DNA of 64,000 nucleotides, from assembly GCA_964057225.1 (NCBI GenBank), contig OZ059898.1, positions 13,702,001-13,766,000 of the forward strand, given 5' to 3'. How positions within the stretch are numbered: the stretch's first letter is position 1; every line of letters begins with the position of its first letter. This stretch comes from Auanema rhodensis. Its lineage: Eukaryota > Animalia > Nematoda. The notes beneath the pieces were generated by a model. The model ran no database searches and was not told the origin of the DNA. It worked only from the letters and a program-made list of their open reading frames with translations. The translations under genes were made by a program, and so were the position numbers. This document shows positions 3,562 to 56,356 of the stretch, piece by piece.

Positions 3562-3630
3562 TACAACCGCATATTAATTATAAAAAATAAAAATGAATTG
3601 TTCTATGCTAATTAGTTAATATGCTAATTA
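3562..3630 (+). promoter_or_regulatory. Variant copy of dispersed element: TACAACCGC followed by 2x TATGCTAATTA (no ACGT pair)
   Basis: TACAACCGC at 3562-3570; TATGCTAATTA at 3604-3614 and 3620-3630. Confidence 0.45.
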
Positions 3631-6095
3631 CATACTAACTAATTACTAAATCATATAATTTTTATAATAAAATATAATAAATAGTTTATGTAAAAAATTT
3701 GAAAAATATATTTATTTAAAAAACATTTTTTTTATAAAATAGCTGAAATTGAGAAGAATTAAATTTATTTTTTTAGAACATTTGTTCTTCTTACAGGTTT
3801 AGTTGAGGAAAACCTATTTGTAAAGAACTTGATGACTTAATTACTTTCCTCTCAAATTCAATATATGGTAATAACTATATGTATAGTATATGTTATAGTT
3901 ATATTCTATATACGTTATATGTATGTATTCTAAACTAAACAACAATAATATTCTTCTATACGATCAAAAATCGTCATTTTCTTAAACATTTCTTTTATTT
4001 TTCTACTATATTAACTATACAAAAACCGTTTTTTTTTGATGAAATAACGTTTCTCAGGCAATCATTCCTCTTCGTTTCATCAAAAATTATTTCAATGATT
4101 CATATAACTTGATGTCTGGTAGATTATCATTTGCATAAAACCCGGTTCTTTGAATACAAAAAACTTAACATCGACCTTCTGTATATCTGAATATTCATCT
4201 CAAGCGAGAAAACATATGGAGAATATATCTTTTTATAAAAAAATAATAAAAAAGATTTAATATATTATATGTATAGTATAAATGTATTTAGATACTTATA
4301 TTTCCTATTTCATAACATGAATGCTCTAAAAATATCTCAAGTGGATGATCATTACTGCTATATCAAGAATCTTGTCAGGTGGATCATATATTCTTCTGTC
4401 TTGTTGTCATTCTATCATTGTATGAATGAGAGATCTCTCTTAGAACTAGTAGCTTTACAACTTTCTTACCAACAAAATCTTTAATTTCTTCTTAATGCTT
4501 ACGAGTATTTGTCACATCTTTCTGTCATGGGCCCTACTTCTTGACCACTTGGGAACTCCTCAAAATACTTTTGAGAGAGAGAATGAGTGAGAAACCGATA
4601 GAAGAAAGAGAGAGAGAGAGATCAACGATGACCATCCCTCCCACTTCTTATGATCATCTTGGCGTTTCTAATATTTCTTTCGTCATTGCCGCACATTAGC
4701 TTTATACTGATGACTTGTCATGATTCCAATGTTTGTCTTAAAACATTTACCTCCCTATAGTCAAAATAACGATTTGTTTAATATCTTAAACGATATGATG
4801 AATTAACTTCTCATAAACTTCAGTTGGGGCATTCATACCCATCTTCAGAAAACAACGTAACGTTTCTTTTCCGTGTATTTCATTTCATTTATACACCCAA
4901 TCTCATTTAAACTATAACCATATCTTCATTTTTTCAGATGAGTTTTGTTGATTGAATTGTTTCGGGCCCTGCTACTACATCATGACTGGCTGTGCGAATA
5001 TATCCGGACTGTCTTTCACTCTCTTATTTGCCGTTTTTTGACGTCAAGCCCATCATCTGATGCAGTTTCGATGGCCATTTATGGAAATGCATATAGAAAC
5101 TCGTCTTACCCACCTCTTTCTTCGTTTCATTCTCATGGTGTTGTCTATCTGGCCTAAAAATTAGTTTATTCCGAAGTTAGTGTAGTTGGATCCAATATCT
5201 GACTGTTGGCTGACCAGACGTCATTGTCGTTGTCTCTGTCGATTTGTACTTCATACTCAAAGTAGATGATTGAAAAAGCCACTTCATTCGTCCGGTTTTT
5301 TTATTCTTTTAGAATAAGGTTTGAGATACAAACTTCTTATGGGATGCACTTGTTGATGTATAATCAAATTACCTCCAATTTCACAAGAAAAAATATTTTA
5401 CATTTCATAAAATGTTCCGACGATGGTTTGTTGTGTGAAGAACTGAATTCGATAAACGACAAAGTAAAAGAAGGAGGTTTCTATTGTTTCTCATGATGGT
5501 AGACAACTGAAAAACGATTAAAACGGTCTTTGATGACTTAACAGTTCTCATTTGCCTCATGAAAATTTCATATTTTGTCATTTCACTTCGAAGAAAACGA
5601 GAATTATGAGATGATATAAAAAAAATCTTAATTATGATGTAATAGTTAAAGAGAGAATAGCAATCAAAGTATATTCAGCTTTTTGACTTTTGATTACCTA
5701 AAACCACCATGAGTGCTTTATGACGATCTACTATGACATGATGGCACATCATCCATATCAGGTTTTTGTTCCTGTATGTCCTTGTTAAAATGCCAGCTTG
5801 AACGGCTTATTAATTGCATCATTTCTGGTTTGCTCGACGGACAAAACCCATTAGTATACATTGAACAACCTCTATATAAGATCAATGTTTGTTAAGATTC
5901 CTCAATTCTTTCTTCTTTGACGAACACAAACTGAACAATTCCTTATGTATTATTTCGTTTTAAAATATATCTTCCGTTATTTGTTTTGTGAATATTTTTC
6001 CCTCACTTCAAATTTTCTGTTTCAAAATTTTTTATATTCATATTTTAAGTAATAAGCATCTGTTAGCATCATTTTAAAAAAATGCAAAATATTCT

Positions 6096-6167
6096 TGGAG
6101 ATATGGGGAATTGAACCCCAGCCCTCTCCCATGCTAAGGGAGCGCTCTACCACTGAGCTATATCCCC
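6096..6167 (-). tRNA. tRNA-Ala, anticodon AGC
   Basis: The reverse complement GGGGATATAGCTCAGTGGTAGAGCGCTCCCTTAGCATGGGAGAGGGCTGGGGTTCAATTCCCCATATCTCCA folds to a 72-nt cloverleaf with A/B boxes and anticodon loop TT-AGC-AT. T-runs (Pol III terminator) follow on the minus strand. Confidence 0.97.
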
Positions 6168-7611
6168 AGCTACCACAAATGTTGCTTCGTGCCCCGTGTA
6201 GACGAATATCAAAACGAAAGTGAATGTAATCGTTTAAATTTGTTTGAATCTTTTCTAATTTGAACAAAATTCGGTGATCCCCTTGAAGTCTGAAGGACTT
6301 TCATTTCATCTCGAACTTTGATTTCAGAAAAGTTCTAAAAATAATTGATTTTCTTGATATTTATACTTCTTTATAACTTTATTTTATGAAAAAGATTATG
6401 CTAAATATTTGAAGAATGAAGCAAAACGATTTATAAATCAAAAATGTGTATTTCTGATGTTTTTTGAGTTGACTGAAACTCTTATTTTGTTTGTAATCTA
6501 GTAATCTGACAGCTATTTTTGTCTTAAAAGGCAAGAAAATTAAACTTTTTCGTTTTTCTTTCTCTTCGTCTTTCCGTCTCTCTGTTATTTCAAACTTTTT
6601 TCATTCTCTCTATTACTTTCTTTTTCACTCTTCAATATTTCTTACAGGTTTTTTTTGAATTATACGACCTCAACAGAGGTTTTGCCAACAGACAATCTTT
6701 GATAGTTAAATTTCTATTATTCACAATACTTTACAACGTATTTCAAAACGCATTTCCTATATAATATCATTGAACATATAAAAATTATTTAAGAATTGTT
6801 GTCTGAAACGCTTCGTTATAGCCATTATCTGGTTTCGTTTGAGTGATTTATACAACTTTTATGGTTTATACATTGTATTTGGCAACTTGACTCTTTCTTT
6901 ACCAGTTTACCTTCTTTCGATTCTTACTTGTCATTCCTCTTTTTCTTCTTTCTTCTCCTGTAAACACATGAAATCAAATGAATTGACAGCAAGCGGATGA
7001 ACATATACATACAAGCGTTGTGAAAACAGGTTGCATTGGTCAGCTCAATCTCATCATAGCTTCAGGGTCTATACTTTGTTACATCCCTCACATCTGATTA
7101 TACTCAAAATCATATATTACGGTAGATGCGATTTGTGTTGAATATCCTTCGAATAAAAGAAGGCTGGGCCTATTTTATGAAAAAAATAGAAGACGCTAGT
7201 ATCTATTCTATTTCTTGTGTCTTCAGACTCGCTCGGTTTTTTTTCTTCTTCATCTTATATTCATCTTATATTGTCTAATCCTTCCCTCTTTATTCTTCCC
7301 CTCCTCTCATATCTCCCTTCTTCTTTTTTTAAGTTCAGCATTTATCTCGTTCTATCCTTGCTTCTATCCTTGCTTGACTTTCTAACTATCTATGCTTATT
7401 CCACTCACAATTCTACAAGGACATATAGTCACTTGAGAAGGTATGAAAAAGCAGTGGTTCATCCTGTCTAGTTCCCTCCCATAAGCTTCTAAGCTTATAT
7501 GATGCTACAGTTTTATAATCGGCTGTCTTCTCATCTACTTAAAGCTCTCAAGTTATTCCTCTTCCTTATTTCCTATCAAATACCCAGTAGTAATAATAAT
7601 ATTGTCTTCCT

Positions 7612-7677
7612 TACAACCGCTTCTTGCCGTCACAACAACGAAAATAATATAAATTATTTCACGTCATTCACGTGAAA
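7612..7677 (+). promoter_or_regulatory. Dispersed bipartite element copy
   Basis: TACAACCGC at 7612-7620; TTCACGTCATTCACGTGAAA with ACGT cores at 7661 and 7670. Confidence 0.65.
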
Positions 7678-8114
7678 TACTTATGTTGTTGTTGTTGTGT
7701 TTTTTAAGTAAATAAATTTCTCCAACTATCTTTATAAGCTACCAATTCAAAAAATTTAAGCCATTTAAGCAAATTTTTCCCAAGGCATTCAAATTAGTAT
7801 TATGAAAATTTGTTTCAAAAATGATTTAACAACGAAATCACTTATTGAAAACTTCTTCTTTTCTGAATACAATAGGAAAGTTTTGGTTTAATTTTTCTTT
7901 ATATGCTTTCATACTTATGAAGCATACTTGAAACTTTCTAACTTTCCAACTTGATGACGCCATTTCCTGTCTACAATCATTGTCTGTTCTTCAGCGCCGT
8001 CAGCCGGTCCTGTGAAGCTTTTCACACTTCACAGTAATAGCTTTCACTGAACTCGCTTATTATAACATCAGACTATAGTCTTTATTCGTCATAATGTTTC
8101 ATTTTATTTTCAGA

Positions 8115-13241: not shown

Positions 13242-16172
13242 TTACTGCCTATGAGATGGGCTCATAGATTGCCTTCTTTGATTTTCTAAATCACGGTCTT
13301 TCAAACTATCAGAAATTCGTTTTTTCAATTCAGTTGGGAAACGATCATAGCATCGTTTACATGTTGGTTTCATATCAAACTCATAGAATTTAGTTCTGAA
13401 ATATTGTTATGAAGGACTTTTCATCAATTATTAGCTTACTTATGATCCATTTTCTTATCGCAGAATGAGCATGAGAAGCATTTGATGCACCAAGTCTTTT
13501 GAAGCGCTTGGAAAATTTCTCCACCACAAGCTTCTCCACATTTGAAGCAAAGATTTCCAAAAAGCTAAAGAAAAACAGAATAAAACTTAAACATAAAAAG
13601 ATTTTTAAATGATTCATACCTTATGATAATGTTGATCACAGTAAGCCAAGCCTTTGCGTTCATAATGACGATGACCGAGGAAAGGTTTCTCACACACAGA
13701 ACAAACGAAATGCTATAATAGAGTTTTTATTTTAATGAAATTTTTTTTTCTCAAATAGAACAAACCTCAACATGCCAGTGCTTTCCAAGAGCAGTAACAA
13801 CTCTCTCTTCAATTGGACGATGACAAGCTCCACAAATAGGAATACCCATTGTATCATGACAACGTAGACAATATAATTCTCCACCAACTTCACGTGAATC
13901 AACAGTAAGCTCACAACTACAATATTAGCATTTGATTTATATGTTTTGTATTTTATGTTATAAATAGTGATATACATATAAGTATGAATATATGTATAAT
14001 ATGCTAATTAGCTAATATCACGTGAAATTCACGTACATATGATGCGTGTAATAATATTTTTGCTACACTATTTTCAAAAACCGGTTGCATTTTATTAAAA
14101 ACAATGTATTTTAAAATGAATAAAGTTAGTTGTTTTCAGTTCATACCTGCATTTTTTACATTTGAAATGGTACGGATGGTATGAATCTCCTCGGAATTTA
14201 ATATGTTGACCCTCGTCAATCATTGCATTACACTTATGGCACACATAACGTCCTGTTCCAGCAGCCTTTTCATGCTCATTGCAATCACGACAAAGAGCTC
14301 TGAAGTATTTGTTTTTAATTATAATACATATAGTTATATATTAATATTATTTGTATAATAATATAATATTTTAAATAGTTTTTTTCTACAATAAAATCCA
14401 AATGTGCAATATCTACCTTCCAGCGTTTCTGAGAAATCCAATGTCAGCCAGTTCTTTACTACACAGCTCACAGCGGAAGCATTGTGGATGCCAGCTGGCA
14501 TTCATAGCTTTAATCACACGGCCAACAATGAATTCATCTATAAAGTGTTTATTTTTTTGGGAAATTAGTTTAAAAAAATGGAATAATCATGCTAATTTCA
14601 TTGATAATCCCTCAAAAAGTATATGTGTTATGAGAGAACTTGAATCAGAAAACTTACTGCATTTTCCGCAGCATGGAGCATAAAGAACATGAAAATCATG
14701 CTCACAGTACTTTCTACCCTCGAATTCGAAGTAAATACCATCGGGGAAAGGCTCAAAACATTGTGCACACCTAATAATATATAGATATAGTTAACATGTT
14801 TTCTATTAACTATTAGCAAAGATAAATGAGTGAGTGCTTAACCACTTACACAAAGCATTCCGAGTGCCATACTTGACCAGTTGAATTGACAATCTGGTCT
14901 TGTAACGAGAAGCCATCAGCACATCTAAATACTATTTTGTGAAAAAAAAAAACGAAATGATAAGTTATTCTTGCTTCGATAAACAATGCGAGAAAAATGG
15001 AATTTCTAATAAAACTGACCTAACACAAACCAAATTTTCAAAGCCATGTGCTAATTCTCCATTAATATGAGCATCCATTCCACCACACACCATCTGAGAA
15101 AAATGTAAATAAGAGAAATATTTAAAAAGAAATAATCAATAGATGAATGAATCATTATATTGTTTCAATAAATTGTATAAAATCAATAAAAATGGAAAAT
15201 TTTTGTTTTTTTTTGTTGGCGAAAATTGTCTTGAAAAATCAAAAATGTTAAGTTAAGAAAGAGCATATTGACTTGAAGATAATAGAGGTGGAATGGTAGA
15301 GGTTTAATGTGTAGGTGGTGGATATCAATAGCATAGAAGAAACGTTTTCAGTGTAAAGCTAGAGAGAGAAAGAGAGAGATGGAACAGAAAGGCATTCGAA
15401 TTGCCACAATGAACAGACGACGACATCATATAGCTCTTTGGACAGCCGGCAAAAATTTTTAAGCTGAAGCATCACCAGTAAATAAGTTAATGAATAAGAA
15501 TTTGAGAAGAAAAATCAGCAAAAAATATATTGAGAAAACGAATACGTTTATGATAATTTGAAAATTTAGTTTTAAATAAAATTAATATTTTTAGAAACAA
15601 ATTGTTAAACCTCAGCCCTCCTTTCCCTTTTTAAGTAAATGAAAACTTTCGAATAATTTTGAAACTAAAAGTATATCTAATCAACAAAATCGTGAGAATA
15701 TGAATGAATCAACAGAATTTAGGTTGAAACGATCGCAATGCGATTTTCGGGAAGAAAAAGAGCAACAATCTTGGCATTTCGCCAGAAAAAAATTGGGTTT
15801 AGAACTAAAGCGAAACGAGCCTTCAAACTGAGGCGTGGTCCACAAAAGCATTGATCCCCGAGAGAGAAAAGAAAAAGAAAAAAGAGAGTGAAAGAATATT
15901 TGAGAGAAATGATGGGAGGGTGCTAGACCGCAAACAACTTAGATATGTCCAGCACGGCTTGTACTACTAAACATCAGGAAAAATGGTGTTTCCATTTTGT
16001 ATTAAAACACAGGATGTGAGAAACAAAAACATTTTAAAAGAGTTTTTGAAAGAAAACATTCCAGAAATGAATAAAGTAGTAATAAATAGGTAATAGAATG
16101 AATATAATATGATATAAGAATGAGTTAGAGGTTAAGTCATTTGCATAAAAATAAAGACGAGGAAGGAGAGAA

Positions 16173-16209
<37 letters not shown>

Positions 16210-16842: not shown

Positions 16843-16851
16843 AGAGAGAGA

Positions 16852-16920
<69 letters not shown>
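16843..16920. repeat. (GA)n microsatellite
   Basis: About 78 nt of near-perfect AG repeat. Shorter tracts lie at ~16175-16208 and, as (CT)n, at ~24486-24520. Confidence 0.95.
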
Positions 16921-16925
<5 letters not shown>

Positions 16926-21466: not shown

Positions 21467-22750
21467 AATCGTTGTTCAACATACAACCAACTACTTACTG
21501 TCTATGAAATCGTGGAGGTCTGATCCAGTTTTAATAAAACCAACGTTATTTGATTTTTTGACCACATGGAATGACAATACTAAAAGTAATAGCATTGTTC
21601 TTTTATGAATGAAATATACTTTTAAATATTTTTTTCAGAAAGTTCTTCTATTTCATTTCATGTTCAATATACCATAGATGAGGTATAAGTTTTAATAAAA
21701 GTTTATAAGATAAATATTCAAATATTTCTAGTTCAAGACAACAATTCCAACTAATTTACCTCCAAACGAACAAAGACGGTTTGAGAGAAAGCTTGAAATG
21801 AAACTGCATCGACAACAGACCCTGTTCATAGCCAATACTAAAGATAGTTTAAGTGGTAAGTATCCGGAAGAAAGTTTGACAGACGACGTCAATTGCTGTT
21901 TTAGAGCCATTAAGAAGACAAGCATCTTTGCCTGAATTATCTTTATTGCCTTCTAATTTCTCATTCAAACGTGTTTCATTTCTATTTAAAGAAGATTGTT
22001 CTTTCTGGCTACCATCGTTAAAAAGATCTTCACAAATTAGTCAGCCAGTAAGTAAATTCAAATACTTTAGATTTTTCATATCTTCAATCAAAGTTTGTTT
22101 CTCTGAGAGCAAACTATCACTATATTCTCGGGGTAATTCTCACAAAGTCAAAGTAATTAAAATTCTTAGATAATTAGAATATCTCATGTTACCATTTCCA
22201 CGTATCTCACGTAATTTCAAAAAATGAAATAAATCATTCAACTTTTAACAATGTCATTAAGCGGTTGCATTTATTGTGTTATTTTCAAAAATATATAATT
22301 TTTTATATTTAAACTATAATTTATAATAATGTTATTTATAGGAATGGACATTATATTCTCCTAAACCTATTCTTGTTCGTAAACCGCGATGTTCATCTTT
22401 ACCTTTATGTCATATGGATTTCGATTCATTCAATGCTTGGAGAAGAGGATCACAAATTAGTGAAGAGGTTAATTATATATTTATTATAACTGCTATAGTT
22501 ATATATTATAATTTAATTAATTTTTTCACAAAATTATGTAATGATAATATTAAATTAATTAAATTGTATTTTAGCTCTATCAAACAAATGCTGCTGTAGC
22601 CCAGAGACTCAGGAAAAAGTTTAAAGATGCGGAAAATTCAGATATCTGGACGCGAACATGCGAATTTTTGAAATCATTTTTATTTCATTGTAAATCTCAA
22701 AATCGAACACAACCTCAAGAAGTAATATATTCAGATGATTATAAACAATA
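21467..22750 (+). CDS. Uncharacterised multi-exon protein (5' end uncertain)
   Basis: Six exons joined by phase-consistent GT-AG introns give a continuous frame (MKSWRSDPVLIKP...PLRRQASLPEL...RKPRCSSLPL...AWRRGSQISEELYQ...DDYKQ*). ATG at 21504, but the frame is open back to an acceptor at 21466. Confidence 0.7.
22198..22269 (-). promoter_or_regulatory. Dispersed bipartite element copy (intronic)
   Basis: On the minus strand: TGCAACCGC (22269-22261), then TTACGTGAGATACGTGG (ACGT at 22209 and 22200). Confidence 0.65.
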
Positions 22751-23980: not shown

Positions 23981-24031
23981 ATTCACTTCTATAGAATAAG
24001 GGAATCTCCTTATTCTCACACAGATTTATAT

Positions 24032-24522: not shown

Positions 24523-25125
24523 TTTCTATCATTGAAACATAATCTCATTTATTCTCTTTTTTTGGCTTCGCTCTCCTTCTTTCTTCTTCTCACCCTCTCT
24601 TCTTCTCTTTCTCTCCCTCTCCCTCCATGCTTTTTCTCTCTCACTTTGTTCAGCCTATGGTGTTTCTTTCTATATTTCTTATCAATCTGCATACTCAATT
24701 TAAAGCAATTGCTGCCGGCTTGTTCTGATTTGTTTGCTTAAATGTTACCTTGACAACCTATCACACCGTTCTTTGGCCAAATCCTATATAAGGCTTGAAC
24801 ACATATACTTCGAGCTAACTTATCAGAGTTAAACAGACCATTTGATGACGCCGACAACGAGGTTCTGTTCAAGATCACCACCAATTATTTTTTTTTTGAT
24901 TTCGTTCATTTCTCTCATTATTAGAACTGTCTACTATCTATTATCTTGTCGATTTAGATGAATTTTTTCAAGATTTTTTTTGGATTATCTCACCTTTTTT
25001 CCATATTTTTCCGATTGAAATTACATATTTTCTTTCTAGTTTTCTTATTACTCAATACGTTTAAGCTTATAGCTGTTCAAATATTTTAATCAAACTTTAT
25101 TTCTTGCTTCAGTTATTTTGTGAAA

Positions 25126-28555: not shown

Positions 28556-28618
28556 TACAACCGCTTATTGTGTCAAAACTGGATAAAATAATTCGAATTA
28601 CGTGAACGTGAACGTGAA
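28556..28618 (+). promoter_or_regulatory. Dispersed bipartite element copy
   Basis: TACAACCGC at 28556-28564; TTACGTGAACGTGAACGTGAA with three ACGT cores at 28600, 28606 and 28612. Confidence 0.65.
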
Positions 28619-41950: not shown

Positions 41951-42944
41951 GGTTCTAAAGAAGAAATGAAATCATATAAGTAAAATCAGTAAAATCTTTA
42001 GTTTTATGAATAAGTCGATAGGTAAAGTACAACATATGAAATAAGATTTTTAAGATTAGAATGTAATAATACTTCCTAAAATATATGAGAAGTAATGAAG
42101 ATGTAATGAAGACATTCACCAAGTGACATCTATTTCGCCCATCATCACTGTCTTATATATGGAGTATCGCTCTATCTCTGTGTAATAGTGTAATCTGAAA
42201 AATAAATAAAAAAAATGATGGAACCGCCAACTCTCGAAGAACGGCTCTCAAATTCGACGACCACAGTGTCTTTGACGACGACTGCAACCTGACGACAAAG
42301 AAGAGAACAACAATAGCACCCAGATCGGAAATGATCTAAGATTACTGTATAAAGCATACATATCTATTGAAACATTCGGGTAATGATGATTCATACTTCC
42401 TTCTTATTTCATGAACATAACACACTTACACTTTCAAAATATTCGTCGAAAGCATACATATGATACACATAGATTCAAAAAAAAATTTTAAAAAAGCCGT
42501 TTTGTTCTCAATTAAGGAAATAGGTTGTCTTTTTGATTTCCCCCTACCACGCTATCATTTTGTTACATATCCCTTCATTTAATGTGATTTTAACGAAAAA
42601 TTCATTTTCTGATTCATTTCTCATTGAACGCATCGGGTTCGCTGTGACCGTCATGTACAAATTGAGCTTTATGCCAAAAAATATCGAACAAAGCCCACTG
42701 TCAGTTTCACAAAGTAACGCACATATACACATATACACAGACACACACATATATATTTATATATTTATATTTATATACTATATACTATATACTATATAAG
42801 TTCTGAATGCATTATATTTTTGTTAATTTACGTATGTGTTATATATTTTTTTTCGATAACGAAAGCTTCAAAATTGGCTGTAAACATATTTCAGGAGAAT
42901 GTTGTTTATTCCTCTTTTAGCAAACATTAAATTACATTATAGAC

Positions 42945-43043
42945 CAAACCGCTCTGTGTTATTGTAATTATAGAAATGATGTGTTCAGTGACAATTAGAT
43001 CACGTGGAAAATTAGAATTGCGTGAATATCAACATTTCACGTA
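42945..43043 (+). promoter_or_regulatory. Degenerate copy of dispersed element
   Basis: CAAACCGC at 42945-42952; TCACGTGG at 43000-43007, TGCGTGAA at 43019-43026, TTCACGTA at 43036-43043. Confidence 0.45.
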
Positions 43044-43251
43044 AACTTTGAAATATGTCGGAAGACTGATTAGTGTGTCATTGTCATTGATCTTTACTTT
43101 GTCTTCTCATAACTAAAGTTTTGTTGCAGAAGGAGAAGAAGAAAAACATTAAAAGAGAAGAAAAAAAAAGAAATTTTAAAATATTTATCTTCGAATAAAT
43201 TATACATTTTTTTGAATTGTACACGCGAAACAAAGAAGGCAGACTCATCTA

Positions 43252-44938: not shown

Positions 44939-46234
44939 TGTTGGATATGGAGATTAGTTGAGTTAAGAAGTCAAACCTCTGAAACAAGTTCAAGTAAAGA
45001 ATAGAGTTTCATGAGCAATTAGAATAAAGCAGCGACGATTACGTTATACGAACGAAAGACAAATGACATCACGATTCTGTCGACAAGCAGTCAAAAGTAA
45101 CTTGAAGCTTGGTACATCATTGGTATGTTCACGGAATAAATAAGATTTTGAAGAAAAAATGAATGAAGACTAATACAAGATTCAATAACATTGTAAGGCT
45201 ATGATGCACATATTGATCCGAACTACGAAACACAAAAACAGCATTAAGGACTACGAAAGCAAAGAGACGTAAAGCCGATAAGGTGTGACGAATTGGTTTG
45301 GTCCAAAATTAAATGTATCAAGTTTATTTATTATGTAAAAACGAGATAGAATAACAATAACAGAGAGAAATACACCGAGATAGTTTGGTAATTTCTAGTA
45401 GTCTCACGATATTTTCACTATATTGGAAATCTTTGAAAACGAGCTTATTCAGGCACTAATGTGTTCGTGGTCGACACAACTTTCTGTTTTTTTTGGGGGG
45501 AGAGAGAGGGGAGGAATAAATTCCAAGCATGGGAGCTAGGAAAAAGCAATCACTAATATAAATTCAAAAAAGACTCAGAAAATGGAGCTTCTGAAGAGAT
45601 ATTCATGGATAAGACCGAGCCAAAGAGAAGCTGAAAGAAAGAGTACAAATGAACCGAATACTTCAAGGGCCAATTTTCATAGATGGCGTGATGTTGTCCC
45701 ATATATTATTGTATTAGCTGAAGTCCGCCGTATTTCAATGAGTTGCTGCGCCTCATGTTGTCTAAGAGAGATGACGACAGAAACGACTTGAACGGCTTAC
45801 AACAACGATGAAGAGAACGACGAGGATGGCAACATGGCCAACGACGAATGCCTCGGTGTCTGCGCGTTCAGCTCATCGTCTTCTTCTGTTCACAAAATTC
45901 ACTTTCGAATCTCTCTTCGCTTGTCGTATATATATAGAGAGAGAGATGCAGACATTTTCATTTCTGCATCTCTAACTAATCCTCTCGTGTTGCCGTATAT
46001 CTGAGATTGGTGTGGTCCTAAATGCGGGAGAACAACGACAAATGTGTCAGTAGTTCCTTGGCAATTAACTGAAAATCCGGAAACGAATGAGCGCTATGTA
46101 GCGTGTTAGAAAAAATCTTTTTGTTTCTTTTCGTATTGCTCAATCATCTAGAACAGTACCAAAAAGAAATTTTTAAATACCAAAATAGATTTAAAAAGTT
46201 AATGAGAGAAAAGGGAAGGAAGAAGAGAATGAGA

Positions 46235-46296
46235 TACAACCGTTTCGTATGTTAAATTTCAAAAAAAAAAAAGAATTTCACGTGAATGTTCACGTA
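46235..46296 (+). promoter_or_regulatory. Dispersed bipartite element copy
   Basis: TACAACCGT at 46235-46243; TTCACGTGAATGTTCACGTA with ACGT at 46280 and 46292. Confidence 0.65.
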
Positions 46297-46588
46297 CAAT
46301 TGAAATTCAATGTAATCTACTAAGTAATACGAATAAAGTATGAAATGACATATTTACATGGAATCTATTTACAAGAAAAAAATTGTTTAAATTGAAACCG
46401 ATGGATAGAACTTGCGAATGTTCCGATCCAAATGAACTATTCCTCTTTAACTGAGCCGCGACTGCAATGTTATCAAACCTTTTTTTTTGCCGTAAATTGA
46501 TATATAATTGGTTCAGAAAGGTCAAAAAAGGCCAAAAAAAGTTTCAAATTATGGCATTTTTTTATGAAAAAAAATTAAGAAAAACCTA

Positions 46589-49849: not shown

Positions 49850-52036
49850 TTCCTGAAACGAAAAATTTGAAAAATGAAATCTGTTAAAGAGAACGAAGTG
49901 TATGCACAACCGGAAGAGTTATCTTAATTACGAAGCTAATCTATGGTAATTTCAGTCTAATAACAATGCGAAGCAATAGGAATAAGGAAAGGAGAGAGTA
50001 AGAGAGAGCAATAGAGTGGAAGAGGGAAAAAGTAAACGAGATAGTAAAGCAGAAGAGAAGAAAAAGAGAGAGAAGAAAGAGAAAAAGAGAGTTACAAGAT
50101 GATCCCTGTTTCTCTAGTTTTCTCATCATTTCTTGAAAATTTTATGCCTTTCCCTCATATCTCGCCTTGCTCCCTTTCTGCTTCTCTTATATCTCTCATA
50201 CTTAGTCGAATCTCTCACCCATTCTATGAGTGTAGTCAGAGATACATGGGGCACATATAGAGGAACACGAGAGACAGCAACAGAGGAAGGGGATAAGTAT
50301 GGATGTGTGTATCTGCGGCATTTACTAGAGATGCTTCAGAACTAATTATGTTAGATATAATTTGATCAGAAACAATACAAGATAATGAGAGAGATCAGAC
50401 AAGCAGATTAGGAGAGAGATAAAAGAATCGACATAGAGTTTTAAAGAAGGAGAAAGAATTAGAAAGAAATATAGAGAGAACGAAAAACAGAGAGAGATAG
50501 AGATAATTTACGTTTTTGGTGTGCTTTCTTGAGTGAGCATGAGTCAAATCATTACAATGTAGCTTTCACAATCACGCCTGAATTGTTAGAAAGAATGAGG
50601 GTGGCATTTAAAGAAAATAGAAGAAAAATAATGTAAAGGGCAGCAAGAAGTAATAAGTTTTCGAACTTATTCTATAAGTTATGCGAAATAGAACATTTGA
50701 AAAAGGGAGAACAAGTGAAAGAGTGAACGAGTCAGACAGAAAGGAAAAGTGAGAGAACAGGCAACAAAAGCAAAAGGAACTTTTGAATTTTCAAATTTAT
50801 AAGATTTTTCGTTCTCATTTTATATAAACGTATAAACTACTGAGTTTATCTAAATATACATATATAGTCGTTCAAATAATAATATTTATATGATTTTCTA
50901 TTTATTAAAAAGTTTGAAGCATGATTGAAACATAAAATTAGATATTCATTTCACAGATTTGATATTCATTGAGTTTTCAACATTCTTATTATACTTTGTA
51001 ATAGAATAATAATCAAAAGTTACAATGAATCTCCATTTTTCTCTTTCTCTTTTTCGTTCCCTCTCTATGCCTCCGTTTCATATATAATTTCTTTCTTTGG
51101 CATAAAAGGAGCTCGAATTACGCAGATAGAATTAGAAAACTACTCAAATGACATGATTCTTCATCTAGATCCTGAAGCTTTAGCCTATAGATTACGCATG
51201 AATTTACTTTTCTTGACGGAGGATCATAATTTGGACGCAATGAATGTATAATATCATTATGTACTACTTTAATAAATATTCTTAAATTAAGAGAGAAGGA
51301 GGATTATGAACGACGACGAATACCTAACTGACTGACTAACTGACTGGTTGACGGGCTGACTGACACAAAATGACAGTGAGGATAAGATGTGAGGAAAAGT
51401 AAAAAAGAAATAATAACATTCAAGAAAAGCACATAAAAAGTATGGAATACTCAAAGTTATAATTGAAGAAAAAATGAAAAACAACACAAAAACCATTTAT
51501 TTTGTTTCTTTTATTCATGTAGAAGACTTAATTGCTGATACATTGACGGGTATTGTGTATAGAAAAAGATGGATATTAGTTAAAAAAAGCATCAAAGCTA
51601 CAAAATAAAATGTTTTAAAGAATTATTCAACAAAACTGAGAAAACGAAAGCTCATGAAAATGAGAAGGACATAGAGGGAGAGAAAAAAACAAAAAAAAGG
51701 GAGGGTGAGGGATGGAGGGAATGTGTATAGAAAATAAGGAAGAAATAGAGAGAGAGAAAGAGAAAGAGAGAGAGAGAGACCAAAAAAATTGTGTTGAAAA
51801 CAACAAGTCGTATGTGTTTATAATTTTGAGGATAATTTTCGAAATTTCATGAAGCATATCGAGAAGAAATTATGAATTATTAGGCTGAATAGCAGAGAGG
51901 TTTGGACTGAAGAAAAAGAAGAAAACGGGAATAGATAGATTGACTGAAAAAGAGGTAGAGACTAAGAGTGACATAGAGAGAGGGATAAATAAGGAAGAGA
52001 GCATGATAGATAGAAGAGAAAAAGATATTTGTTATG

Positions 52037-52097
52037 TTCAACCGCTTCATGCGTTACGTACTTGAAAAAAGTTTTTTTACGTCAATTCCCTACGTAA
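52037..52097 (+). promoter_or_regulatory. Dispersed bipartite element copy
   Basis: TTCAACCGC at 52037-52045; ACGT cores at 52056, 52079 and 52092. Confidence 0.55.
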
Positions 52098-55000
52098 AAA
52101 AAATGGCGTTGTGAGACTAAAAAGAACATTTTAACCTCTGAAAGAAGATATTGAAAGGAAATCTGAGAAATGATCGACACACACCATGGAGGGCCATGTA
52201 TTGAGCTTGGGCCATTCCCATTTTCTCACTTCTATTTCTCTGTGTTGCCCCACGTCGGCTTTCTTCTATCTCGATTTGCTCACTCTTTCTCTATTTCCGT
52301 TTTTGCTTCTACTACTACTACCTCATCATTTTTCTGATTTTGGCTTCATTCAAAAAATAAGAAGTTTTTTTGATCTGAATAGAAAGAGCTGGATGTCTTT
52401 CATTTCTGTTTGCTTGTGGCCGAAATTCAGTACAACTGCAAAATATTAATATGCCTAAAGATTCATAAGAAAAATATTGTAAAACTTGTCACGAGATAGC
52501 ATTTTTTTGTCAAAAATGAGATGACTCGCAGTTCTTATTGAGAACTCGATGCTTTATTATCTCTGTGTCCGCAACTTTATTTGGACAAACAACTTCATGA
52601 TATCCTGAACGCTCAATAGCAAAAATAAAATAAAAAAGAGAAAGAATGTTATTTCTCTTGTGAAATCCGAAAAGAAAGATATCGAATTAGCTTGTTCATC
52701 TTTAGCGCTGGCCAATACATCTTATGGAAACGAACAAAACGAACTCGTAGTCACACTGCAATGCTCACAGCAGGACTTCAAGAAAGAAAATTGAACGAAA
52801 TAGAACCAAAAATGGCTGGAGAATGAGAAGGGAAAACGGACTGAAAACTGAAAAAAAATGAAGCTGTAAACGAAAAAAAGAAATTAAAATCGTGACGAAA
52901 TGAGAGTCAAGGGAGTTGAGCGATTGATGGTGGCGACCAAGTTGTGGTGCATGTTATTCCCCTGTCTAATTTGGACAGTTTTATCAGAAAAGGAGAAATA
53001 AGAAGATAGTACTGAAATGAGAAGATCAAAGAAAAACAAATCTTTCATATTTTGTATTCTTAATATTATGATAGAAAGGTATTAGATTAATATTCTTTTC
53101 TGTCTGTTCAGTGAGCGTCATTTTGACGCAGCTGAGTCCGTTTGGTGAAATAAAAAGTAAATAGTAGTTTGTATGAATATCAGTATTAGACAAAAAATAA
53201 TAATATGCTTTATAATATTTGGAGAAAAAGAAAAATGAGGAAGAAGAAGAAAAAGAAAAAGCAGAAGAATAAGAATAAGAAGAAAAAAACAAAGTAAATC
53301 ATAAAAGTTGTTGAAAGACTATACTTCAAATAGGAAATGAAGTACAAGATCATTAGTAGTTGATTCATCCATCGTAACTCAGCAGTAAAGATAGGCATGG
53401 AATAGCATCAAACATTTAAACTTATGGATGTATTCTTGTCTTCGGAAGACATTCACAATAGACGAGAAGAGATAGTATATCTAAGAAAAGTAAAATAGAA
53501 ATAGCCCCAGATACATTGAAAAGTTAGTGAAAATGTATTGAGTGAAGCTTGTCCGAATAGAATATTGAAGATAGAATGCTCAAATTAGCTCCAATGCTAA
53601 TCGTTGAAGCATATGTAAATTCTTCTTTCTTGACTTGTTTCTAGTCAAACAAGTAGTATGATAGATAGATAAGCATGTACTTAAAGATAGAATAAATCAT
53701 ATTTGCAATTACAGACACTGACGAAGTGATTTTAACTATCCGATTCAGGCATTTGGGTGGTTAAACTGCTTGAATAGAACTTCTAGTCTGATCGCTGGCG
53801 GAGAAATTTCCGCTTTCTCTCTCATATATCGGAATTTTGTGCGGGATTTAAGTGAACATGGGTAATTGTCAATTTCTCTTCAGTTGAAGTACTTGTAACC
53901 CATAGGGAATATATGGACTTATGGATATACTTATAACAAAAGAAAGTTGATAATAGTTTTCAAATTGTTTGAAAAGTAACAAAAAATTCCATTGATTTCT
54001 CAATTTCAACAAAGAATTTGAAAACATGCTCATGCTCTGAAAATAGAGTAAGATAAAGACAATAGAACTTTAAGAAATATGAAGGTGAAGGCTTTCTCAT
54101 AATCATGCAACACTTATTTTGTGAATAACTCAATCAACACTAATTGAAAACAAGAAAGAAAAACATTTTTTCAGCTAAATTTTCATTAAAATATTCTGTG
54201 ATATGCTGTGACATGTGAGATCAGATTATAATTTGCTGTGGTTTGTCATAACATTGTCTATGTGTTGAAATCTTTTGTTTTACTAATTATTTAAGTTAGG
54301 TTGACAAAAAGCTTGATGATAAGGAGGAAACTGTTGAATAATTCTGAAGACTTGAAGCAGTTTTCTACTAACTAATGTGGGACTGTTTGATTTTTATAGC
54401 AGATGAGGACTCTCAGTAAATGAGCAATAAAGAGTGGAGGGAATGTAGGAAAAAGATGAGTGATACTGAGATGACTTGCTTGAAGGTAAGTGATGGTTGT
54501 TATTGAATAAAGCCCTCGCTCACACTTAAAACTTTGGTCACAAACTTTGAAAATACTATTTTTGTTTATTTTTTCTCTTTTTTTTTTCATCAAAAAAAAA
54601 GTTTTTTTTCTGAATAAACGAATGAAAAAGGGAGAGAGTGTTATTATTTTGAAAATGAATGATAGGAGAAAATTGAAAAAATGAAACTAAACAGTTGGAA
54701 ATGAAAAGTATTTTATACAAGAAACTGCCAAATTCATTCACATACTGCATGTACATACATATATCTTTTGCCTTAACTAGGAATAATGTGTCCCCGTTTC
54801 GTCTTCAACACAATCTCTTCTAATCACAGTTTCTATTGAGCAGATTGTCAGACTCAGCTGCTAGCCTAATTAGGAACTAAAGGCCCATAGAGTGGCAAAA
54901 CGAGAAGAGAAAGAGGAAAATCATGAAAGAGCTATGCGATGGAACTATTTCCATCTGTATTCAGTAGATAAAGATCGAAAAAAAAGAAAGTAGGTTTGAA

Positions 55001-56299
55001 AGAATTTAATTTTCTTTCTCTCTTTCTCTCACTCTCCCTTTTCTCTATCTCATTTTGTATCTATCTCTCTTTCTCTTGTTGGAAGTGCTATGAACGAGCA
55101 TTCTCTTAAAAAAATTAACATCTGGTTATTTCGGATTACTTCTATTCTTCAAACAATAACTATAATAAAAATTTATTATTATTATTTTTATTTTTATTAT
55201 TATGAGAATATTCAATTTATATTATATTTAATGTAATATAAATATAGAGCATAGTTTAATAATTTCAGATGCAAGACAATTCGATAGTGAAATGCAAGAA
55301 TTGTTCACCACGGAGATCATAAAAGAATTTTCAAATTTCAATTGCTTTTACACTAAGAGCATGCAGAAGACTTATGACAATAGAAATGTTTTAAATGACG
55401 TGAAAAATGTCTTCAAAATGTAGGAAGTGGTTGTTGGATGGAAGACAATAAAATAGAAACTGAGGCACATGAATGAACTTGATCTTAGCTTCAACAGTAC
55501 AATCAGGGAATTTTTTTGGACGCCAGAATGAGAAAAGAAAACAGAATAAAGACAACAACAAATTGTCTTCTTCAGCTCTTCTCATATGCTTCATCTTCTT
55601 CTTCTTCTTATACATCATTGACTTAAAAATTCAGAAGAGATTGAATTCAAAGTACAGCTAGCTTGTCAATCGAAATAAGCAATTGCCATTTCGTTTTTGT
55701 GCTCTACAGAAAGAGCCGAACTGAGCCCAGCTTATAGAGACACAGAGAATTTCGCTATTTCATGAATGTCCTCCAACAGCAACTTCAATGTCTTCATGCA
55801 TGATGACGACTCAGCGGAAGACAACGGAGGCTCTAGACAGCTGAATCGAAAGGGATTATAACATGAGCAGCTACTATATTTAGTTTATGACAAGTCAATT
55901 GGTGATTTTTAAGTTGAATACTCTATTCTTTTATTGAAAATATTTGTAAAACGAATCTAATATTTATTGCTGAAAAAAAGAAAGTTCGCATAAAATAGAT
56001 GATGACAAATTAAAAATTTGCATTTTATGGATCATTGTTTGGTGACTGAACACATTTCAAGGGATTCAACAGACGAATAAAATAGGATTTTGTTGTTAAA
56101 TTGAAAACAAATGAAGAATACTAGTAAACATGAACTCAACGGTTTCTAAGAATTTTAATAAATTCAAATAAATTTAATTTTGCAGCGAAGGAAGTCTAGT
56201 AGCCAAGTAAATAATAATATTTACTAGTTTTTTTTAAAAAAAAAAAGAAGCAAAATATCTTCTTTATTAACATTTAATTTTGTAAGAATTCAATTTAAG

Positions 56300-56356
56300 T
56301 ACAACCGCTCATCTCATCTTTGAACTTAAAAATGATACGAATATAGTGACGTGAAA
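56300..56356 (+). promoter_or_regulatory. Dispersed bipartite element copy (single ACGT core)
   Basis: TACAACCGC at 56300-56308; TGACGTGAAA with ACGT at 56349. Confidence 0.55.

What the first reader, a model, noticed from the sequence alone, without database searches (positions are those of the whole stretch)
3562..56356. Dispersed, orientation-independent bipartite DNA element: TRCAACCG + AT-rich spacer (~35-50 nt) + paired ACGT/CACGTG
SEEN: by eye I find eight T(A/G)CAACCG sites, all non-coding: 3562+, 7612+, 14089-, 22269-, 28556+, 31085+, 46235+ and 56300+. Seven have an ACGT core 37-59 nt 3' of the anchor, and six have two or three cores 6-12 nt apart (e.g. TTCACGTCATTCACGTGA, TACGTGAATTTCACGTGA, TTACGTGAATTACGTGA, TCACGTGAATGTTCACGTA). 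Near-matches at 52037+ and 42945+ follow the same rule. Four of the five non-coding CACGTG palindromes I noticed sit in such elements. The spacers share no sequence, and the copies have no TIRs or TSDs, so this does not look like a transposon family. Copies lie in introns of unrelated genes and in intergenic DNA, on either strand and at no fixed distance from an ATG, roughly one per 6-7 kb. Rough estimate at an eyeballed ~30% GC: only 1-2 TRCAACCG sites are expected by chance, and a paired ACGT at fixed polarity should be rare. KNOWN: CACGTG/RCGTG are bHLH-type sites and YAACNG is Myb-like. Budding-yeast point centromeres are RTCACRTG (CDEI) + AT-rich spacer + CCG-containing CDEIII. Caenorhabditis uses lineage-specific clustered motifs for dosage-compensation recruitment (rex/MEX) and pairing centres. 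INFERENCE: a two-protein, spacing-constrained chromosomal address, for example an X-recognition site for dosage compensation, a holocentromere or replication landmark, or a pairing or DNA-elimination signal. The mundane alternative is a composite enhancer. I do not recognise it as a described nematode motif.
Basis: partly seen in the sequence, partly recalled or inferred. Interest (0 to 1): 0.88.

Follow-up and report, generated by a model that had tools for sequence, protein, structure and literature searches.

The report
Fly-type start-site cassette in a nematode
The repeated two-part motif is real and, read on the opposite strand, looks like a compact 80-base gene-start signal of the fruit-fly type (start box plus a second box exactly 28 letters downstream); a sister worm species keeps it at the same places, but no RNA has yet been seen starting at it.

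Summary
All eight TRCAACCG sites and both near-matches exist as described (8 found, 0.8 expected). Seven of eight have an oriented ACGTGA at +30 to +70, against about 1% at random positions.

The rigid part is on the other strand. There, a T-Y-A-T-T-T block lies exactly 27 nt upstream of (A/G)GCGGTTGY. This matches the Drosophila initiator plus DPE rule (RGWYV at +28; motif KCGGTTSK). One to three TTCACGTGAA-type boxes lie upstream, at -65 to -9.

The window comes from an Auanema-like rhabditid. In the orthologous contig of Auanema sp. JU1783, seven of the eight cassettes I could test recur in the same place and orientation, although the flanking DNA does not align. I found none in 13-27 kb samples of Mesorhabditis, Caenorhabditis, Nippostrongylus or Diploscapter.

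Several cassettes lie 75-1,500 nt upstream of co-oriented genes. Others lie antisense in introns. RNA contigs show no stable transcript from the two copies I could examine.

Best reading (confidence about 0.6): a lineage-restricted, TATA-less RNA polymerase II initiation cassette. It is not a chromosome address. Follow-ups on other windows of this genome reached the same Inr-DPE reading. The cross-species conservation and the RNA check are new here.

The parts
3560..3640 (-). Cassette 1. Predicted A+1 is at 3595 on the - strand, with TTCATTT, then N24, then ATGCGGTTGTA. It has no ACGT box; two TAATTAGCATA repeats lie upstream instead. It points toward the CNG-channel gene (- strand, exons at 3046 and below).
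   Evidence: (PWM 19.1)
7610..7690 (-). Cassette 2. A+1 is at 7645 (-). The boxes TTCACGTGAA and ATGACGTGAA start at -28 and -19, and the anchor is AAGCGGTTGTA. It lies about 470 nt upstream of the collagen gene's trans-splice acceptor and ATG (8114/8115, + strand) but points away from that gene.
   Evidence: PWM 26.1
14011..14091 (+). Cassette 3. A+1 is at 14056 (+), with boxes at -36 and -25 and anchor AACCGGTTGCA. It lies antisense in an intron of the LIM-domain gene (- strand, 13242-15096). JU1783 has a counterpart at L007 TSS 1971 (+).
22191..22271 (+). Cassette 4. A+1 is at 22236 (+), with TCATT, boxes at -36 and -27, and anchor AAGCGGTTGCA. It lies in sense orientation in an intron of the gene orthologous to JU1783's 257-aa gene. 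This is the only testable copy without an intact JU1783 counterpart; only a decayed relic is visible there.
28554..28634 (-). Cassette 5. A+1 is at 28589 (-), with three TTCACGT boxes at -26, -20 and -14 and anchor AAGCGGTTGTA. It lies between two + strand genes and points away from the reductase gene. JU1783 has a counterpart at L007 TSS 9099 (-). No RNA contig covers 27497-30451 in the four RNA runs.
31083..31163 (-). Cassette 6. A+1 is at 31118 (-), with two TTCACGTAA boxes at -30 and -21 and anchor CAGCGGTTGCA. It lies antisense in the 281-nt intron 3 of the expressed reductase gene. JU1783 has a counterpart in the same intron (L007 TSS 10367 -) with the anchor variant GGTCA.
42942..43046 (-). 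A+1 is at 42977 (-), with TCATT, boxes at -65 and -28, and anchor GAGCGGTTTGG. It lies about 1 kb upstream of the co-oriented glycine-rich secreted-protein gene (ATG at 41950). JU1783 has a counterpart at L007 TSS 17389 (-).
46233..46313 (-). Cassette 8. A+1 is at 46268 (-), with boxes at -27 and -15 and anchor AAACGGTTGTA. It lies between the two stomatin paralogs, co-oriented with them, about 180 nt upstream of a block conserved in JU1783 (45996-46088). The JU1783 counterpart (L007 TSS 20180 -) shares the unusual AACGGTTGT variant.
52035..52115 (-). A+1 is at 52070 (-), with boxes at -25 and -12 and anchor AAGCGGTTGAA. It lies 2.2 kb upstream of the acceptor and ATG of stomatin paralog 2 (49852). 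The JU1783 counterpart (L005 TSS 15448 +) matches at 16 of 17 positions from +17 to +32.
56298..56378 (-). Cassette 10. A+1 is at 56333 (-), with TCATT, one box at -19 and anchor GAGCGGTTGTA. It lies 2.4 kb downstream of the end of the HADH gene, co-oriented with the run of - strand genes. JU1783 has a counterpart at L005 TSS 12631 (+).

Best explanation
Each copy is a compact (about 80 bp), TATA-less RNA polymerase II initiation cassette.

Proposed mechanism (inferred):
1. One to three E-box/G-box-like sites (consensus TTCACGTGAA, usually 6-13 nt apart) between -65 and -9 bind a bHLH-ZIP or bZIP activator.
2. TFIID is positioned by an initiator-like T-Y-A(+1)-T-T-T and by a downstream element R-A-G-C-G-G-T-T-G-Y at +24 to +33. 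That element has the sequence (KCGGTTSK; RGWYV) and the exact +28 register of the Drosophila DPE.
3. Transcription then starts at the A and runs away from the ACGT boxes.

Shown here:
- the motif blocks;
- their single-nucleotide spacing;
- their conservation at orthologous sites in a second Auanema species;
- their absence from small samples of other rhabditids;
- several copies 75-1,500 nt upstream of co-oriented genes.

Inferred: that TFIID binds and that transcription starts at A+1. What the intronic-antisense and gene-distant copies transcribe is unknown.
For: **Spacing**
- In the window, TYATT-N(k)-GGTTG peaks at k=24 (5 matches, against 0-2 at the other spacings from 14 to 35).
- Over 22 cassettes from two species, the A of YATT lies exactly 27 nt upstream of the first G of GGTTG in 15 cases. 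No other offset from -12 to +12 has more than 2. TCA is at that offset in 8 of 22.

**Sequence**
- Positions +27 to +31 are invariant (CGGTT) in the 15 aligned copies. Positions +24 to +26 are R-A-G.
- In the window, 4 of 10 anchors match KCGGTTSK exactly, 5 have one mismatch and 1 has two.
- Literature: the fly DPE is RGWYV at +28 to +32 with strict spacing (PMC5580651). KCGGTTSK is a precisely positioned DPE-like fly motif and TCATTCG is an Inr variant (PMC1779564). The Ohler DPE consensus is CRWMGCGWKCGGTTS (PMC4803293). TCAKTY and KCGGTTSK are used as Inr and DPE consensus motifs (PMC6483594).

**Upstream boxes**
- The ACGT boxes fall where a TATA box would: -36 to -12 in the window, and -65 to -9 over 49 boxes.

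**Conservation**
- The window's HADH and reductase are 86-90% identical to those of Auanema sp. JU1783, and gene order is the same.
- Seven of eight testable cassettes have a JU1783 counterpart in the same gene-relative place and orientation.
- In the pairwise alignments only the boxes, the Inr block and the anchor survive.
- PWMs trained on one species find the other species' cassettes.

**Relation to genes in the annotated JU1783 DNA**
- Predicted starts lie 81 nt upstream of the C2-domain gene's ATG, with a TTTCAG acceptor 7 nt before that ATG.
- They also lie 182 nt upstream of Rad21/Rec8, and 1.0, 1.2 and 1.5 kb upstream of two stomatins and a 621-aa gene. All are co-oriented.
- Six cassettes have a co-oriented gene start within 2.5 kb only in this orientation. 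None has one only in the flipped orientation.

**Lineage restriction**
- PWM plus ACGT-box hits: 9 in the window and 13 in the two overlapping JU1783 loci, against 0 in M. belari (25.8 kb), N. brasiliensis (27.5 kb), C. bovis (21 kb), D. pachys (13.5 kb) and a syntenic metagenome nematode contig. Shuffled sequences give about 0.
Against: **No transcript start has been seen.** RNA contigs from four runs over 27300-33200 show the spliced reductase mRNA. They show nothing over 27497-30451, downstream of cassette 5, and nothing in the intron holding cassette 6. Contigs cannot show rare, short or unstable RNAs.

**Orientation is not uniformly gene-friendly.**
- Among intronic copies, 3 are antisense and 2 are sense in JU1783. 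In the window, 2 are antisense and 1 is sense.
- Cassette 5 and its JU1783 counterpart lie upstream of the reductase gene but point away from it.
- Cassette 2 points away from the collagen gene 470 nt away.

**Other reservations.**
- Some distances from predicted start to gene are long for nematode outrons (1-2.2 kb).
- The initiator block is AT-rich in an AT-rich genome. It has C at -1 in only about a third of copies.
- At least one neighbouring gene uses a conserved conventional TATA promoter instead. An independent 21.5-kb JU1783 locus holds only two strong cassettes for seven genes.
- The PWM was trained on the same Auanema copies that it counts.
Confidence: 0.6

Rival explanations
1. The module is an oriented composite cis-regulatory element, such as an enhancer, boundary or tethering element. 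Sequence-specific factors bind it: a bHLH/bZIP protein on the ACGT boxes, plus a multi-domain protein (for example a multi-zinc-finger protein) that reads both TYATTT and AGCGGTTGY. It is not itself a transcription start.
For: - Intronic copies occur in both orientations relative to the host gene, and some conserved copies point away from the nearest gene.
- No RNA is seen from the two copies examined.
- Other recurrent factor-type motifs (TAATTAGCATA) accompany some copies.
- Block-wise conservation with free spacers is typical of regulatory modules.
Against: - A single-nucleotide-rigid 24-nt gap with unconserved filling is unusual for pairs of transcription factor sites, but it is the hallmark of Inr-DPE recognition (PMC5580651).
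- The anchor equals the fly DPE motif KCGGTTSK and sits in the fly register.
- Two copies sit 81 and 182 nt upstream of ATGs, with acceptor sites in between.
Confidence: 0.22
2. The cassettes are autonomous units for short capped RNAs: piRNA-type or paused-polymerase products of about 28-35 nt. Polymerase II starts at a YRNT initiator and stops or pauses at the GC-rich anchor.
For: - Y-A-T-T fits the YRNT initiator. The anchor begins at +27/+28, and in flies DPE-type motifs are classed as pausing elements (PMC6483594).
- Many copies are 'orphans', with no stable RNA and no nearby co-oriented gene.
- Density is high and copies occur in introns.
Against: - The canonical nematode piRNA upstream motif CTGTTTCA is at chance level (3 found, 2.97 expected) and is not next to cassettes.
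- The copies are conserved by position between species. From general knowledge, not tested here, piRNA loci are generally not so conserved.
- Positions +20 to +27 are constrained, which a free small-RNA sequence would not be.
- No small-RNA data could be examined.
Confidence: 0.1
3. The element is a chromosome-level address: X recognition for dosage compensation, a holocentromere or replication landmark, or a pairing or DNA-elimination signal.
For: - It is dispersed at multi-kilobase spacing, it is restricted to one lineage and it has more than one part.
- I did not test chromosome-scale distribution.
Against: - Density is about one per gene, and copies sit at conserved gene-relative positions and orientations in a second species.
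- The rigid half matches a core-promoter architecture.
- Unverified notes from this scan report the same element on many other pieces of the genome, which argues against X-specificity.
Confidence: 0.03
4. The copies are decayed members of a short transposon, SINE or MITE family.
For: There are many copies of similar length in introns and intergenic DNA.
Against: - Flanks and spacers do not align among copies.
- Only discrete blocks are conserved, and they are kept in register.
- Copies occupy orthologous sites in two species whose other non-coding DNA does not align. This means old insertions under selection, not neutral decay.
I did not search for them separately.
Confidence: 0.02

Closest known systems
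Drosophila TATA-less Inr + DPE core promoters (Inr TCAKTY; DPE RGWYV(T) at +28 to +33; positional motif KCGGTTSK, also called DPE2; Ohler motif 9, CRWMGCGWKCGGTTS)
   Same: - The downstream element matches (GCGGTTGT = KCGGTTSK; GGTTG, GGTTT and GGTCA all fit RGWYV).
- The register relative to an A in a T-Y-A-T-T-T block is the same, with G at +28.
- The spacing is strict to the nucleotide.
- There is no TATA box.
   Different: - The host is a rhabditid nematode. DPE was reported as not enriched in C. elegans promoters (PMC3730108).
- The initiator has T more often than C at -1.
- The cassette is stereotyped, with tandem TCACGTGA-type boxes at -65 to -9.
- Many copies are intronic or distant from annotated starts.
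- Initiation and TFIID binding have not been demonstrated.
CLEAR / E-box (TCACGTGA) sites of MiT/TFE, Max and USF-type bHLH-ZIP factors, and ACGT-core bZIP sites
   Same: The upstream box consensus is TTCACGTGAA. The commonest 6-mers are TCACGT (20 of 49) and CCACGT (9 of 49).
   Different: - Here the boxes are tandem and oriented.
- They are confined to the core-promoter window and tied to one downstream architecture.
- The binding factor is unknown.
C. elegans piRNA (21U-RNA) transcription units (Ruby motif + YRNT initiator + pausing)
   Same: - They are small autonomous polymerase II units.
- They use a YRNT-type initiator.
- A signal lies near +28.
- In some nematodes they are dispersed in introns.
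   Different: - There is no Ruby motif.
- Position is conserved between species.
- Positions +20 to +33 are constrained.
- There is no small-RNA evidence.
Budding-yeast point centromere (CDEI RTCACRTG, AT-rich CDEII, CDEIII with CCG)
   Same: There is a superficial resemblance: a CACGTG-like box, an AT-rich spacer and a CCG-containing box.
   Different: - There are ten copies in 64 kb.
- The spacer is 35-50 nt and contains a fixed internal block.
- Placement is gene-proximal and conserved.
- Nematodes are holocentric.

Membership tests
Inr + DPE core promoter (Drosophila type) | DPE consensus RGWYV(T) at +28 to +32(33) relative to A+1 | tested here: met
   All 22 cassettes have GGTTG (19), GGTTT (2) or GGTCA (1) starting 27 nt after the A of the TYATTT block. 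The consensus is taken from PMC5580651.
Inr + DPE core promoter (Drosophila type) | Strict, single-nucleotide Inr-DPE spacing | tested here: met
   YATT is at the exact offset in 15 of 22 cassettes, and no other offset from -12 to +12 has more than 2. In the window, the spacing scan peaks at k=24.
Inr + DPE core promoter (Drosophila type) | Initiator consensus TCAKTY around +1 | tested here: inconclusive
   The consensus here is T-Y-A-T-T-T. TCA is at the exact offset in 8 of 22; most of the others have TTA. The block carries little information in a genome with 30% GC.
Inr + DPE core promoter (Drosophila type) | Extended fly DPE motif KCGGTTSK / GCGWKCGGTTS | tested here: met
   In the window, 4 of 10 anchors match KCGGTTSK exactly, 5 have one mismatch and 1 has two. 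Positions +24 to +26 (R-A-G) fit G-W-K. The motifs are taken from PMC1779564 and PMC4803293.
Inr + DPE core promoter (Drosophila type) | Transcription initiates at A+1 | tested here: inconclusive
   RNA contigs show no stable RNA from cassettes 5 and 6. Contigs cannot show starts or rare RNAs. Indirect support: acceptor-plus-ATG sites lie 75-180 nt downstream of two JU1783 cassettes.
Inr + DPE core promoter (Drosophila type) | TFIID (TAF6/TAF9, TAF1/TAF2) contacts on the Inr and DPE | not testable with these tools
   This needs footprinting or ChIP.
Nematode piRNA loci | Ruby motif CTGTTTCA about 40 nt upstream of the small RNA | tested here: not met
   There are 3 matches against 2.97 expected, and none is next to a cassette.
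   Rfam gathering thresholds give only tRNA-Ala in the window and nothing in L005 or L007. I could not compare the anchor with this genome's own PSE.
Transposon / MITE / SINE | Alignable body and flanks, with termini or target duplications | tested here: not met
   The multiple alignment shows only motif blocks. Copies are at orthologous sites in two species.
Point centromere (CDEI-II-III) | One per chromosome, with a CDEII of about 80 bp that is over 90% A+T | tested here: not met
   There are ten copies in 64 kb, with 35-50 nt between the boxes and the anchor.
X-recruitment (rex/MEX-type) sites | Enrichment on the X chromosome | not testable with these tools
   The chromosome identity of the window is unknown. 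Unverified scan notes place the element on many pieces of the genome.

The most novel reading that the evidence does not exclude
Auanema carries a genome-wide class of autonomous 80-bp polymerase II loading or initiation cassettes of the fly Inr-DPE type. A large fraction of them are 'orphans': antisense in introns, or pointing away from the nearest gene, yet conserved between species. These orphans would make a new class of short or unstable regulatory transcripts, or act as paused-polymerase or boundary sites, and not as mRNA promoters.
Probability: 0.2. Interest if true: 0.8.

Novelty: new variant of a known kind. Interest (0 to 1): 0.6.

Why it matters
If transcription does start at these cassettes:

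- A nematode genus would use, at roughly gene density, a stereotyped promoter with the same downstream element and spacing as Drosophila DPE promoters. That architecture was reported as not enriched in C. elegans, and I did not find it in small samples of four other rhabditid genera. This bears on whether DPE recognition by TFIID is ancestral and latent across Ecdysozoa, or was re-invented.
- Start sites would become predictable from sequence in a trans-splicing genome, where mRNA 5' ends are erased.
- It would give a minimal 80-bp promoter for Auanema transgenesis.
- The conserved antisense-intronic and gene-divergent copies would become a testable set of candidate regulatory transcripts.

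Tried and rejected
- **Literature, exact anchor strings.** A search for the exact anchor 8-mers found no paper. A search for Auanema with promoter and motif found nothing that describes this element.
- **Known RNA genes.** Rfam and tRNA scans found only tRNA-Ala at 6095-6168, and nothing in the JU1783 loci.
In runs of same-strand genes every cassette would then point backwards.
- **Runx or Myb site for the anchor.** Neither consensus fits all copies. The first position is A or G where Y is needed for Runx, and the anchor reads CAACCG where Myb needs YAACKG. This rests on consensus sequences recalled from memory.
- **piRNA Ruby motif.** It is at chance level.
- **Exact-protein look-up of the 78-aa glycine-rich ORF.** It is not on record.
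- **First homolog search with a single-exon ORF.** It found only distant fragments. Species identification needed an alignment query.
- **Distant syntenic contigs.** L001-L004, M. belari (L006), N. brasiliensis (L008), C. bovis (L009) and D. pachys (L010) have no cassettes.
- **JU1783 cassette at L007 7044 as the counterpart of window cassette 4.** I rejected this after the synteny map. That gene has a conserved TATA promoter instead.
- **Conserved 110-nt block downstream of cassette 10 as a miRNA or other ncRNA.** The fold is weak (-13 kcal/mol) and no Rfam hit is credible.
- **Steps not taken.** I could not look up the full spliced reductase protein, because it has no single reference and I did not type it. 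Read laying was used once, with 5,901 letters.

Full report
**1. Checking the observation**

Dinucleotide shuffles give 0.77 on average and never more than 4. I oriented each site on its own strand and counted downstream cores. Seven of eight carry ACGT, ACGTG and ACGTGA within +30 to +70, and six of eight carry two or more ACGT cores. A random position and strand in this window has one or more ACGTGA in such a span with probability 0.0099.

The two near-matches (52037, 42945) have the same layout, and 3562 lacks ACGT. CACGTG is over-represented (9 against 2.65). Four of the five non-coding CACGTG copies lie in elements. The fifth (18798) is an ACGT cluster without an anchor. GC content is 25-36%.

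**2. Anatomy**

A MAFFT alignment of the ten copies shows two things. A third block, AAAAT(A/G)A, sits at a fixed distance from it.

Earlier notes of this scan on other windows of the same genome gave me the lead to read the opposite strand as ACGT boxes, then TCATT, then N24, then GGTTG. I tested that lead here:

- **Spacing in the window.** TYATT-N(k)-GGTTG has 5 matches at k=24, against 0-2 at each other spacing from 14 to 35.
- **Block positions.** With all copies aligned on GGTTG, the block T-Y-A-T-T-T ends 24 nt before GGTTG in nine of ten copies.
- **Conserved positions.** Over 15 cassettes, positions +27 to +31 are invariant (CGGTT), +32 is G in 14 of 15, +24 to +26 are R-A-G, +20 is C in 10 of 15, and -2 to +4 read T-Y-A-T-T-T.
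- **Spacing over two species.** Over 22 cassettes, the A of YATT is exactly 27 nt upstream of the first G in 15. No other offset from -12 to +12 has more than 2.
- **Upstream boxes.** The ACGT boxes start at -36 to -12 in the window. Over 49 boxes in both species they lie at -65 to -9. Their consensus is TTCACGTGAA, and neighbouring boxes are mostly 6-13 nt apart.
- **Copy count.** A PWM separates ten cassettes in the window (scores 19-30) from everything else (12 or below, with no ACGT box).

**3. Species and genes**

RNA contigs from four runs laid on 27300-33200 define a spliced 380-codon reductase gene on the + strand (exons from 30576 to 32737). Cassette 6 lies antisense in its 281-nt third intron.

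Codon-usage scoring and cross-species tblastx give the rest of the map:

| Gene | Strand | Approximate position |
|---|---|---|
| CNG channel | - | 465-3046 |
| tRNA-Ala | - | 6095-6168 |
| Collagen | + | from 8115 |
| Astacin | + | 10.5-12.7 kb |
| LIM-domain gene | - | 13242-15096 |
| Ortholog of JU1783 257-aa gene | + | 21.5-22.8 kb |
| Ortholog of JU1783 120-aa gene | - | 22.97-23.8 kb |
| Ortholog of JU1783 309-aa gene | + | 25144-27177 |
| Reductase | + | 30576-32737 |
| Coiled-coil gene | - | 37.5-40.3 kb |
| Glycine-rich secreted protein | - | ATG at 41950 |
| Stomatin paralog 1 | - | 43.2-46.1 kb |
| Stomatin paralog 2 | - | 46.5-49.9 kb |
| HADH | - | 58.7-60.0 kb |
| ZW10 | - | from 60.2 kb |

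HADH is about 90% identical, and the reductase 86% identical, to proteins of Auanema sp. JU1783. No closer protein is in the collection. The window is therefore from an Auanema-like rhabditid. This agrees with the published A. rhodensis GC content of 32.2% and a density of about one gene per 5 kb (PMC6469403).

**4. Conservation**

Both JU1783 proteins lie on one 106-kb contig. I fetched two stretches of it (L005 and L007), which show the same gene order as window positions 10-64 kb.

Cassettes recur there at matching positions and orientations:

| Window cassette | JU1783 counterpart | Place |
|---|---|---|
| 3 | L007 1971 (+) | antisense in the same LIM-gene intron |
| 5 | L007 9099 (-) | between the 309-aa gene and the reductase |
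| 6 | L007 10367 (-) | same reductase intron, antisense; anchor GGTCA, which still fits RGWYV |
| 7 | L007 17389 (-) | downstream of stomatin 1, upstream of the glycine-rich gene |
| 8 | L007 20180 (-) | between the stomatins; shares the AACGGTTGT variant |
| 9 | L005 15448 (+) | upstream of stomatin 2; 16 of 17 identical from +17 to +32 |
| 10 | L005 12631 (+) | downstream of HADH |

Cassette 4 has only a decayed relic in the JU1783 intron. Cassettes 1 and 2 lie outside the DNA I fetched. That makes seven of the eight testable cassettes conserved.

Pairwise alignments of the surrounding DNA, including the two orthologous introns, conserve little except the boxes, the Inr block and the anchor. 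PWMs trained on one species recover the other species' cassettes. This is block-wise purifying selection, not repeat decay.

**5. Phylogenetic reach**

| Source | Length | PWM + ACGT-box hits |
|---|---|---|
| Window | 64 kb | 9 |
| JU1783 (L005 + L007, overlapping) | 43 kb | 13 |
| M. belari | 25.8 kb | 0 |
| N. brasiliensis | 27.5 kb | 0 |
| C. bovis | 21 kb | 0 |
| D. pachys | 13.5 kb | 0 |
| Metagenome nematode contig with HADH-stomatin synteny | 14 kb | 0 |
| Metagenome contig L003 | 11.2 kb | 1 (borderline) |
| Logan contig L004 | 9.3 kb | 0 |

Shuffled sequences give about 0. The samples are small, and the PWM was trained on the Auanema copies. This supports lineage restriction but does not prove it.

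**6. Relation to genes**

In the annotated JU1783 DNA, predicted starts lie:

- 182 nt upstream of the Rad21/Rec8 ATG, with a TTTCTAG acceptor in between;
- 1.0 kb and 1.2 kb upstream of the two stomatins;
- 1.5 kb upstream of the 621-aa gene. The unannotated glycine-rich gene is closer still.

All of these are co-oriented with the gene. In an independent JU1783 locus (L011), a strong cassette starts 81 nt upstream of the C2-domain gene's ATG, and a TTTCAG acceptor lies 7 nt before that ATG. This is the classic layout of promoter, short outron, trans-splice site and ATG.

Six cassettes have a co-oriented gene start within 2.5 kb only in the GGTTG orientation. None has one only in the flipped orientation.

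The picture is not clean:

- The reductase-proximal pair (cassettes 5 and 6, and their JU1783 counterparts) point away from or against that gene.
- Intronic copies are sense or antisense with no preference.
- Cassette 2 points away from the collagen gene 470 nt away.
- Four RNA runs show no contig over 27497-30451.
- The 309-aa gene has a conserved conventional TATA promoter.
- L011 has only two strong cassettes for seven genes.

The cassette is therefore one class of promoter-like element, not the universal one. Some copies have no identified product.

**7. Comparison with known systems**

The Drosophila DPE is RGWYV(T) at +28 to +33 relative to A+1 of the Inr. A one-nucleotide change in spacing gives a several-fold loss of activity (PMC5580651). 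The positionally precise fly motifs include KCGGTTSK (DPE-like) and TCATTCG (an Inr variant) (PMC1779564). The Ohler DPE consensus is CRWMGCGWKCGGTTS (PMC4803293). Current work uses TCAKTY and KCGGTTSK as Inr and DPE consensus motifs (PMC6483594).

The nematode anchor GCGGTTGT is an exact KCGGTTSK. It sits with G at +28 from the only A of the fixed TYATTT block, and +24 to +26 (R-A-G) fit G-W-K. DPE and MTE were reported as not enriched in C. elegans promoters (PMC3730108).

I found no paper that describes this module in nematodes.

A match in both an 8-mer and a single-nucleotide register is unlikely to be a coincidence. This is why I prefer the initiation-cassette reading (0.6) to a generic composite regulatory element (0.22), a short-RNA unit (0.1), a chromosome address (0.03) or a transposon relic (0.02).

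**8. Relation to earlier notes of this scan**

Several follow-ups on other windows of this genome reached the same Inr-DPE reading, without RNA data. New here:

- conservation of position and orientation in Auanema sp. JU1783;
- absence from samples of other genera;
- the two cases of promoter, outron and acceptor;
- laid RNA contigs that show two copies are not starts of stable RNAs;
- the finding that conserved copies include antisense-intronic and gene-divergent ones.

**9. Verdict**

The chromosome-address interpretation is not supported. The module is most likely a lineage-restricted, TATA-less, fly-type Inr + DPE initiation cassette driven by E-box-like sites. Initiation itself remains to be shown.

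Noticed in passing
window 3600-3640, 14005-14030, 18805-18820; L007 about 17400-17420; L011 about 19730-19790: A second motif, TAATTAGCATA(T), recurs just upstream of or beside cassettes and ACGT clusters. It looks like a homeodomain or POU-type site. In cassette 1 two copies take the place of the ACGT boxes.
   Followed up: partly
window 54775-54885 (- strand) and L005 13510-13621: A block of about 110 nt is roughly 92% identical between the two species, inside DNA that otherwise does not align, downstream of cassette 10. It contains TAATTAGG and CAGCTG. It folds weakly and has no credible Rfam match, so it is probably an enhancer.
   Followed up: partly
window 24690-24810 and L007 7140-7265: A conserved non-coding block ends in CCTATATAAGGCTTGAA, about 330 nt upstream of the 309-aa gene's start. 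This is a conventional TATA promoter conserved between the species, next to the cassette-type elements.
   Followed up: partly
L007 12805-13060: A minisatellite of about eight 29-30-nt units lies just downstream of the JU1783 reductase gene. Each unit carries the anchor-like GAACGGTTGCATT.
   Followed up: no
L005 7680-7800: About ten ACGT/ACGTG boxes are packed into 110 nt of a ZW10 intron in JU1783. They are followed by a sense-oriented cassette 2.2 kb upstream of the HADH start, which may be an internal promoter.
   Followed up: no
window 18770-18805: An orphan pair of TCACGT boxes (one is the palindrome TCACGTG) plus TAATTAGCATAT lies here with no GGTTG anchor downstream.
   Followed up: partly
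window 6095-6168 (- strand): A tRNA-Ala (AGC) gene, at 69.5 bits, is the only Rfam gathering-level hit in the window.
   Followed up: yes
L001/L002 (ENA metagenome scaffolds): A metagenome contig from an unidentified nematode keeps the HADH-then-stomatin gene order seen in the window and in JU1783. It has no cassettes.
   Followed up: partly
protein P0001: A UniRef entry labelled Biomphalaria glabrata HADH is 90% identical to the Trichostrongylus colubriformis HADH. It is probably nematode contamination in the snail data.
   Followed up: no
window 27461-27467: RNA contigs of three runs end here, about 290 nt after the last conserved exon of the 309-aa gene (+ strand). This is probably its poly(A) site, although no canonical AATAAA lies upstream.
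   Followed up: partly
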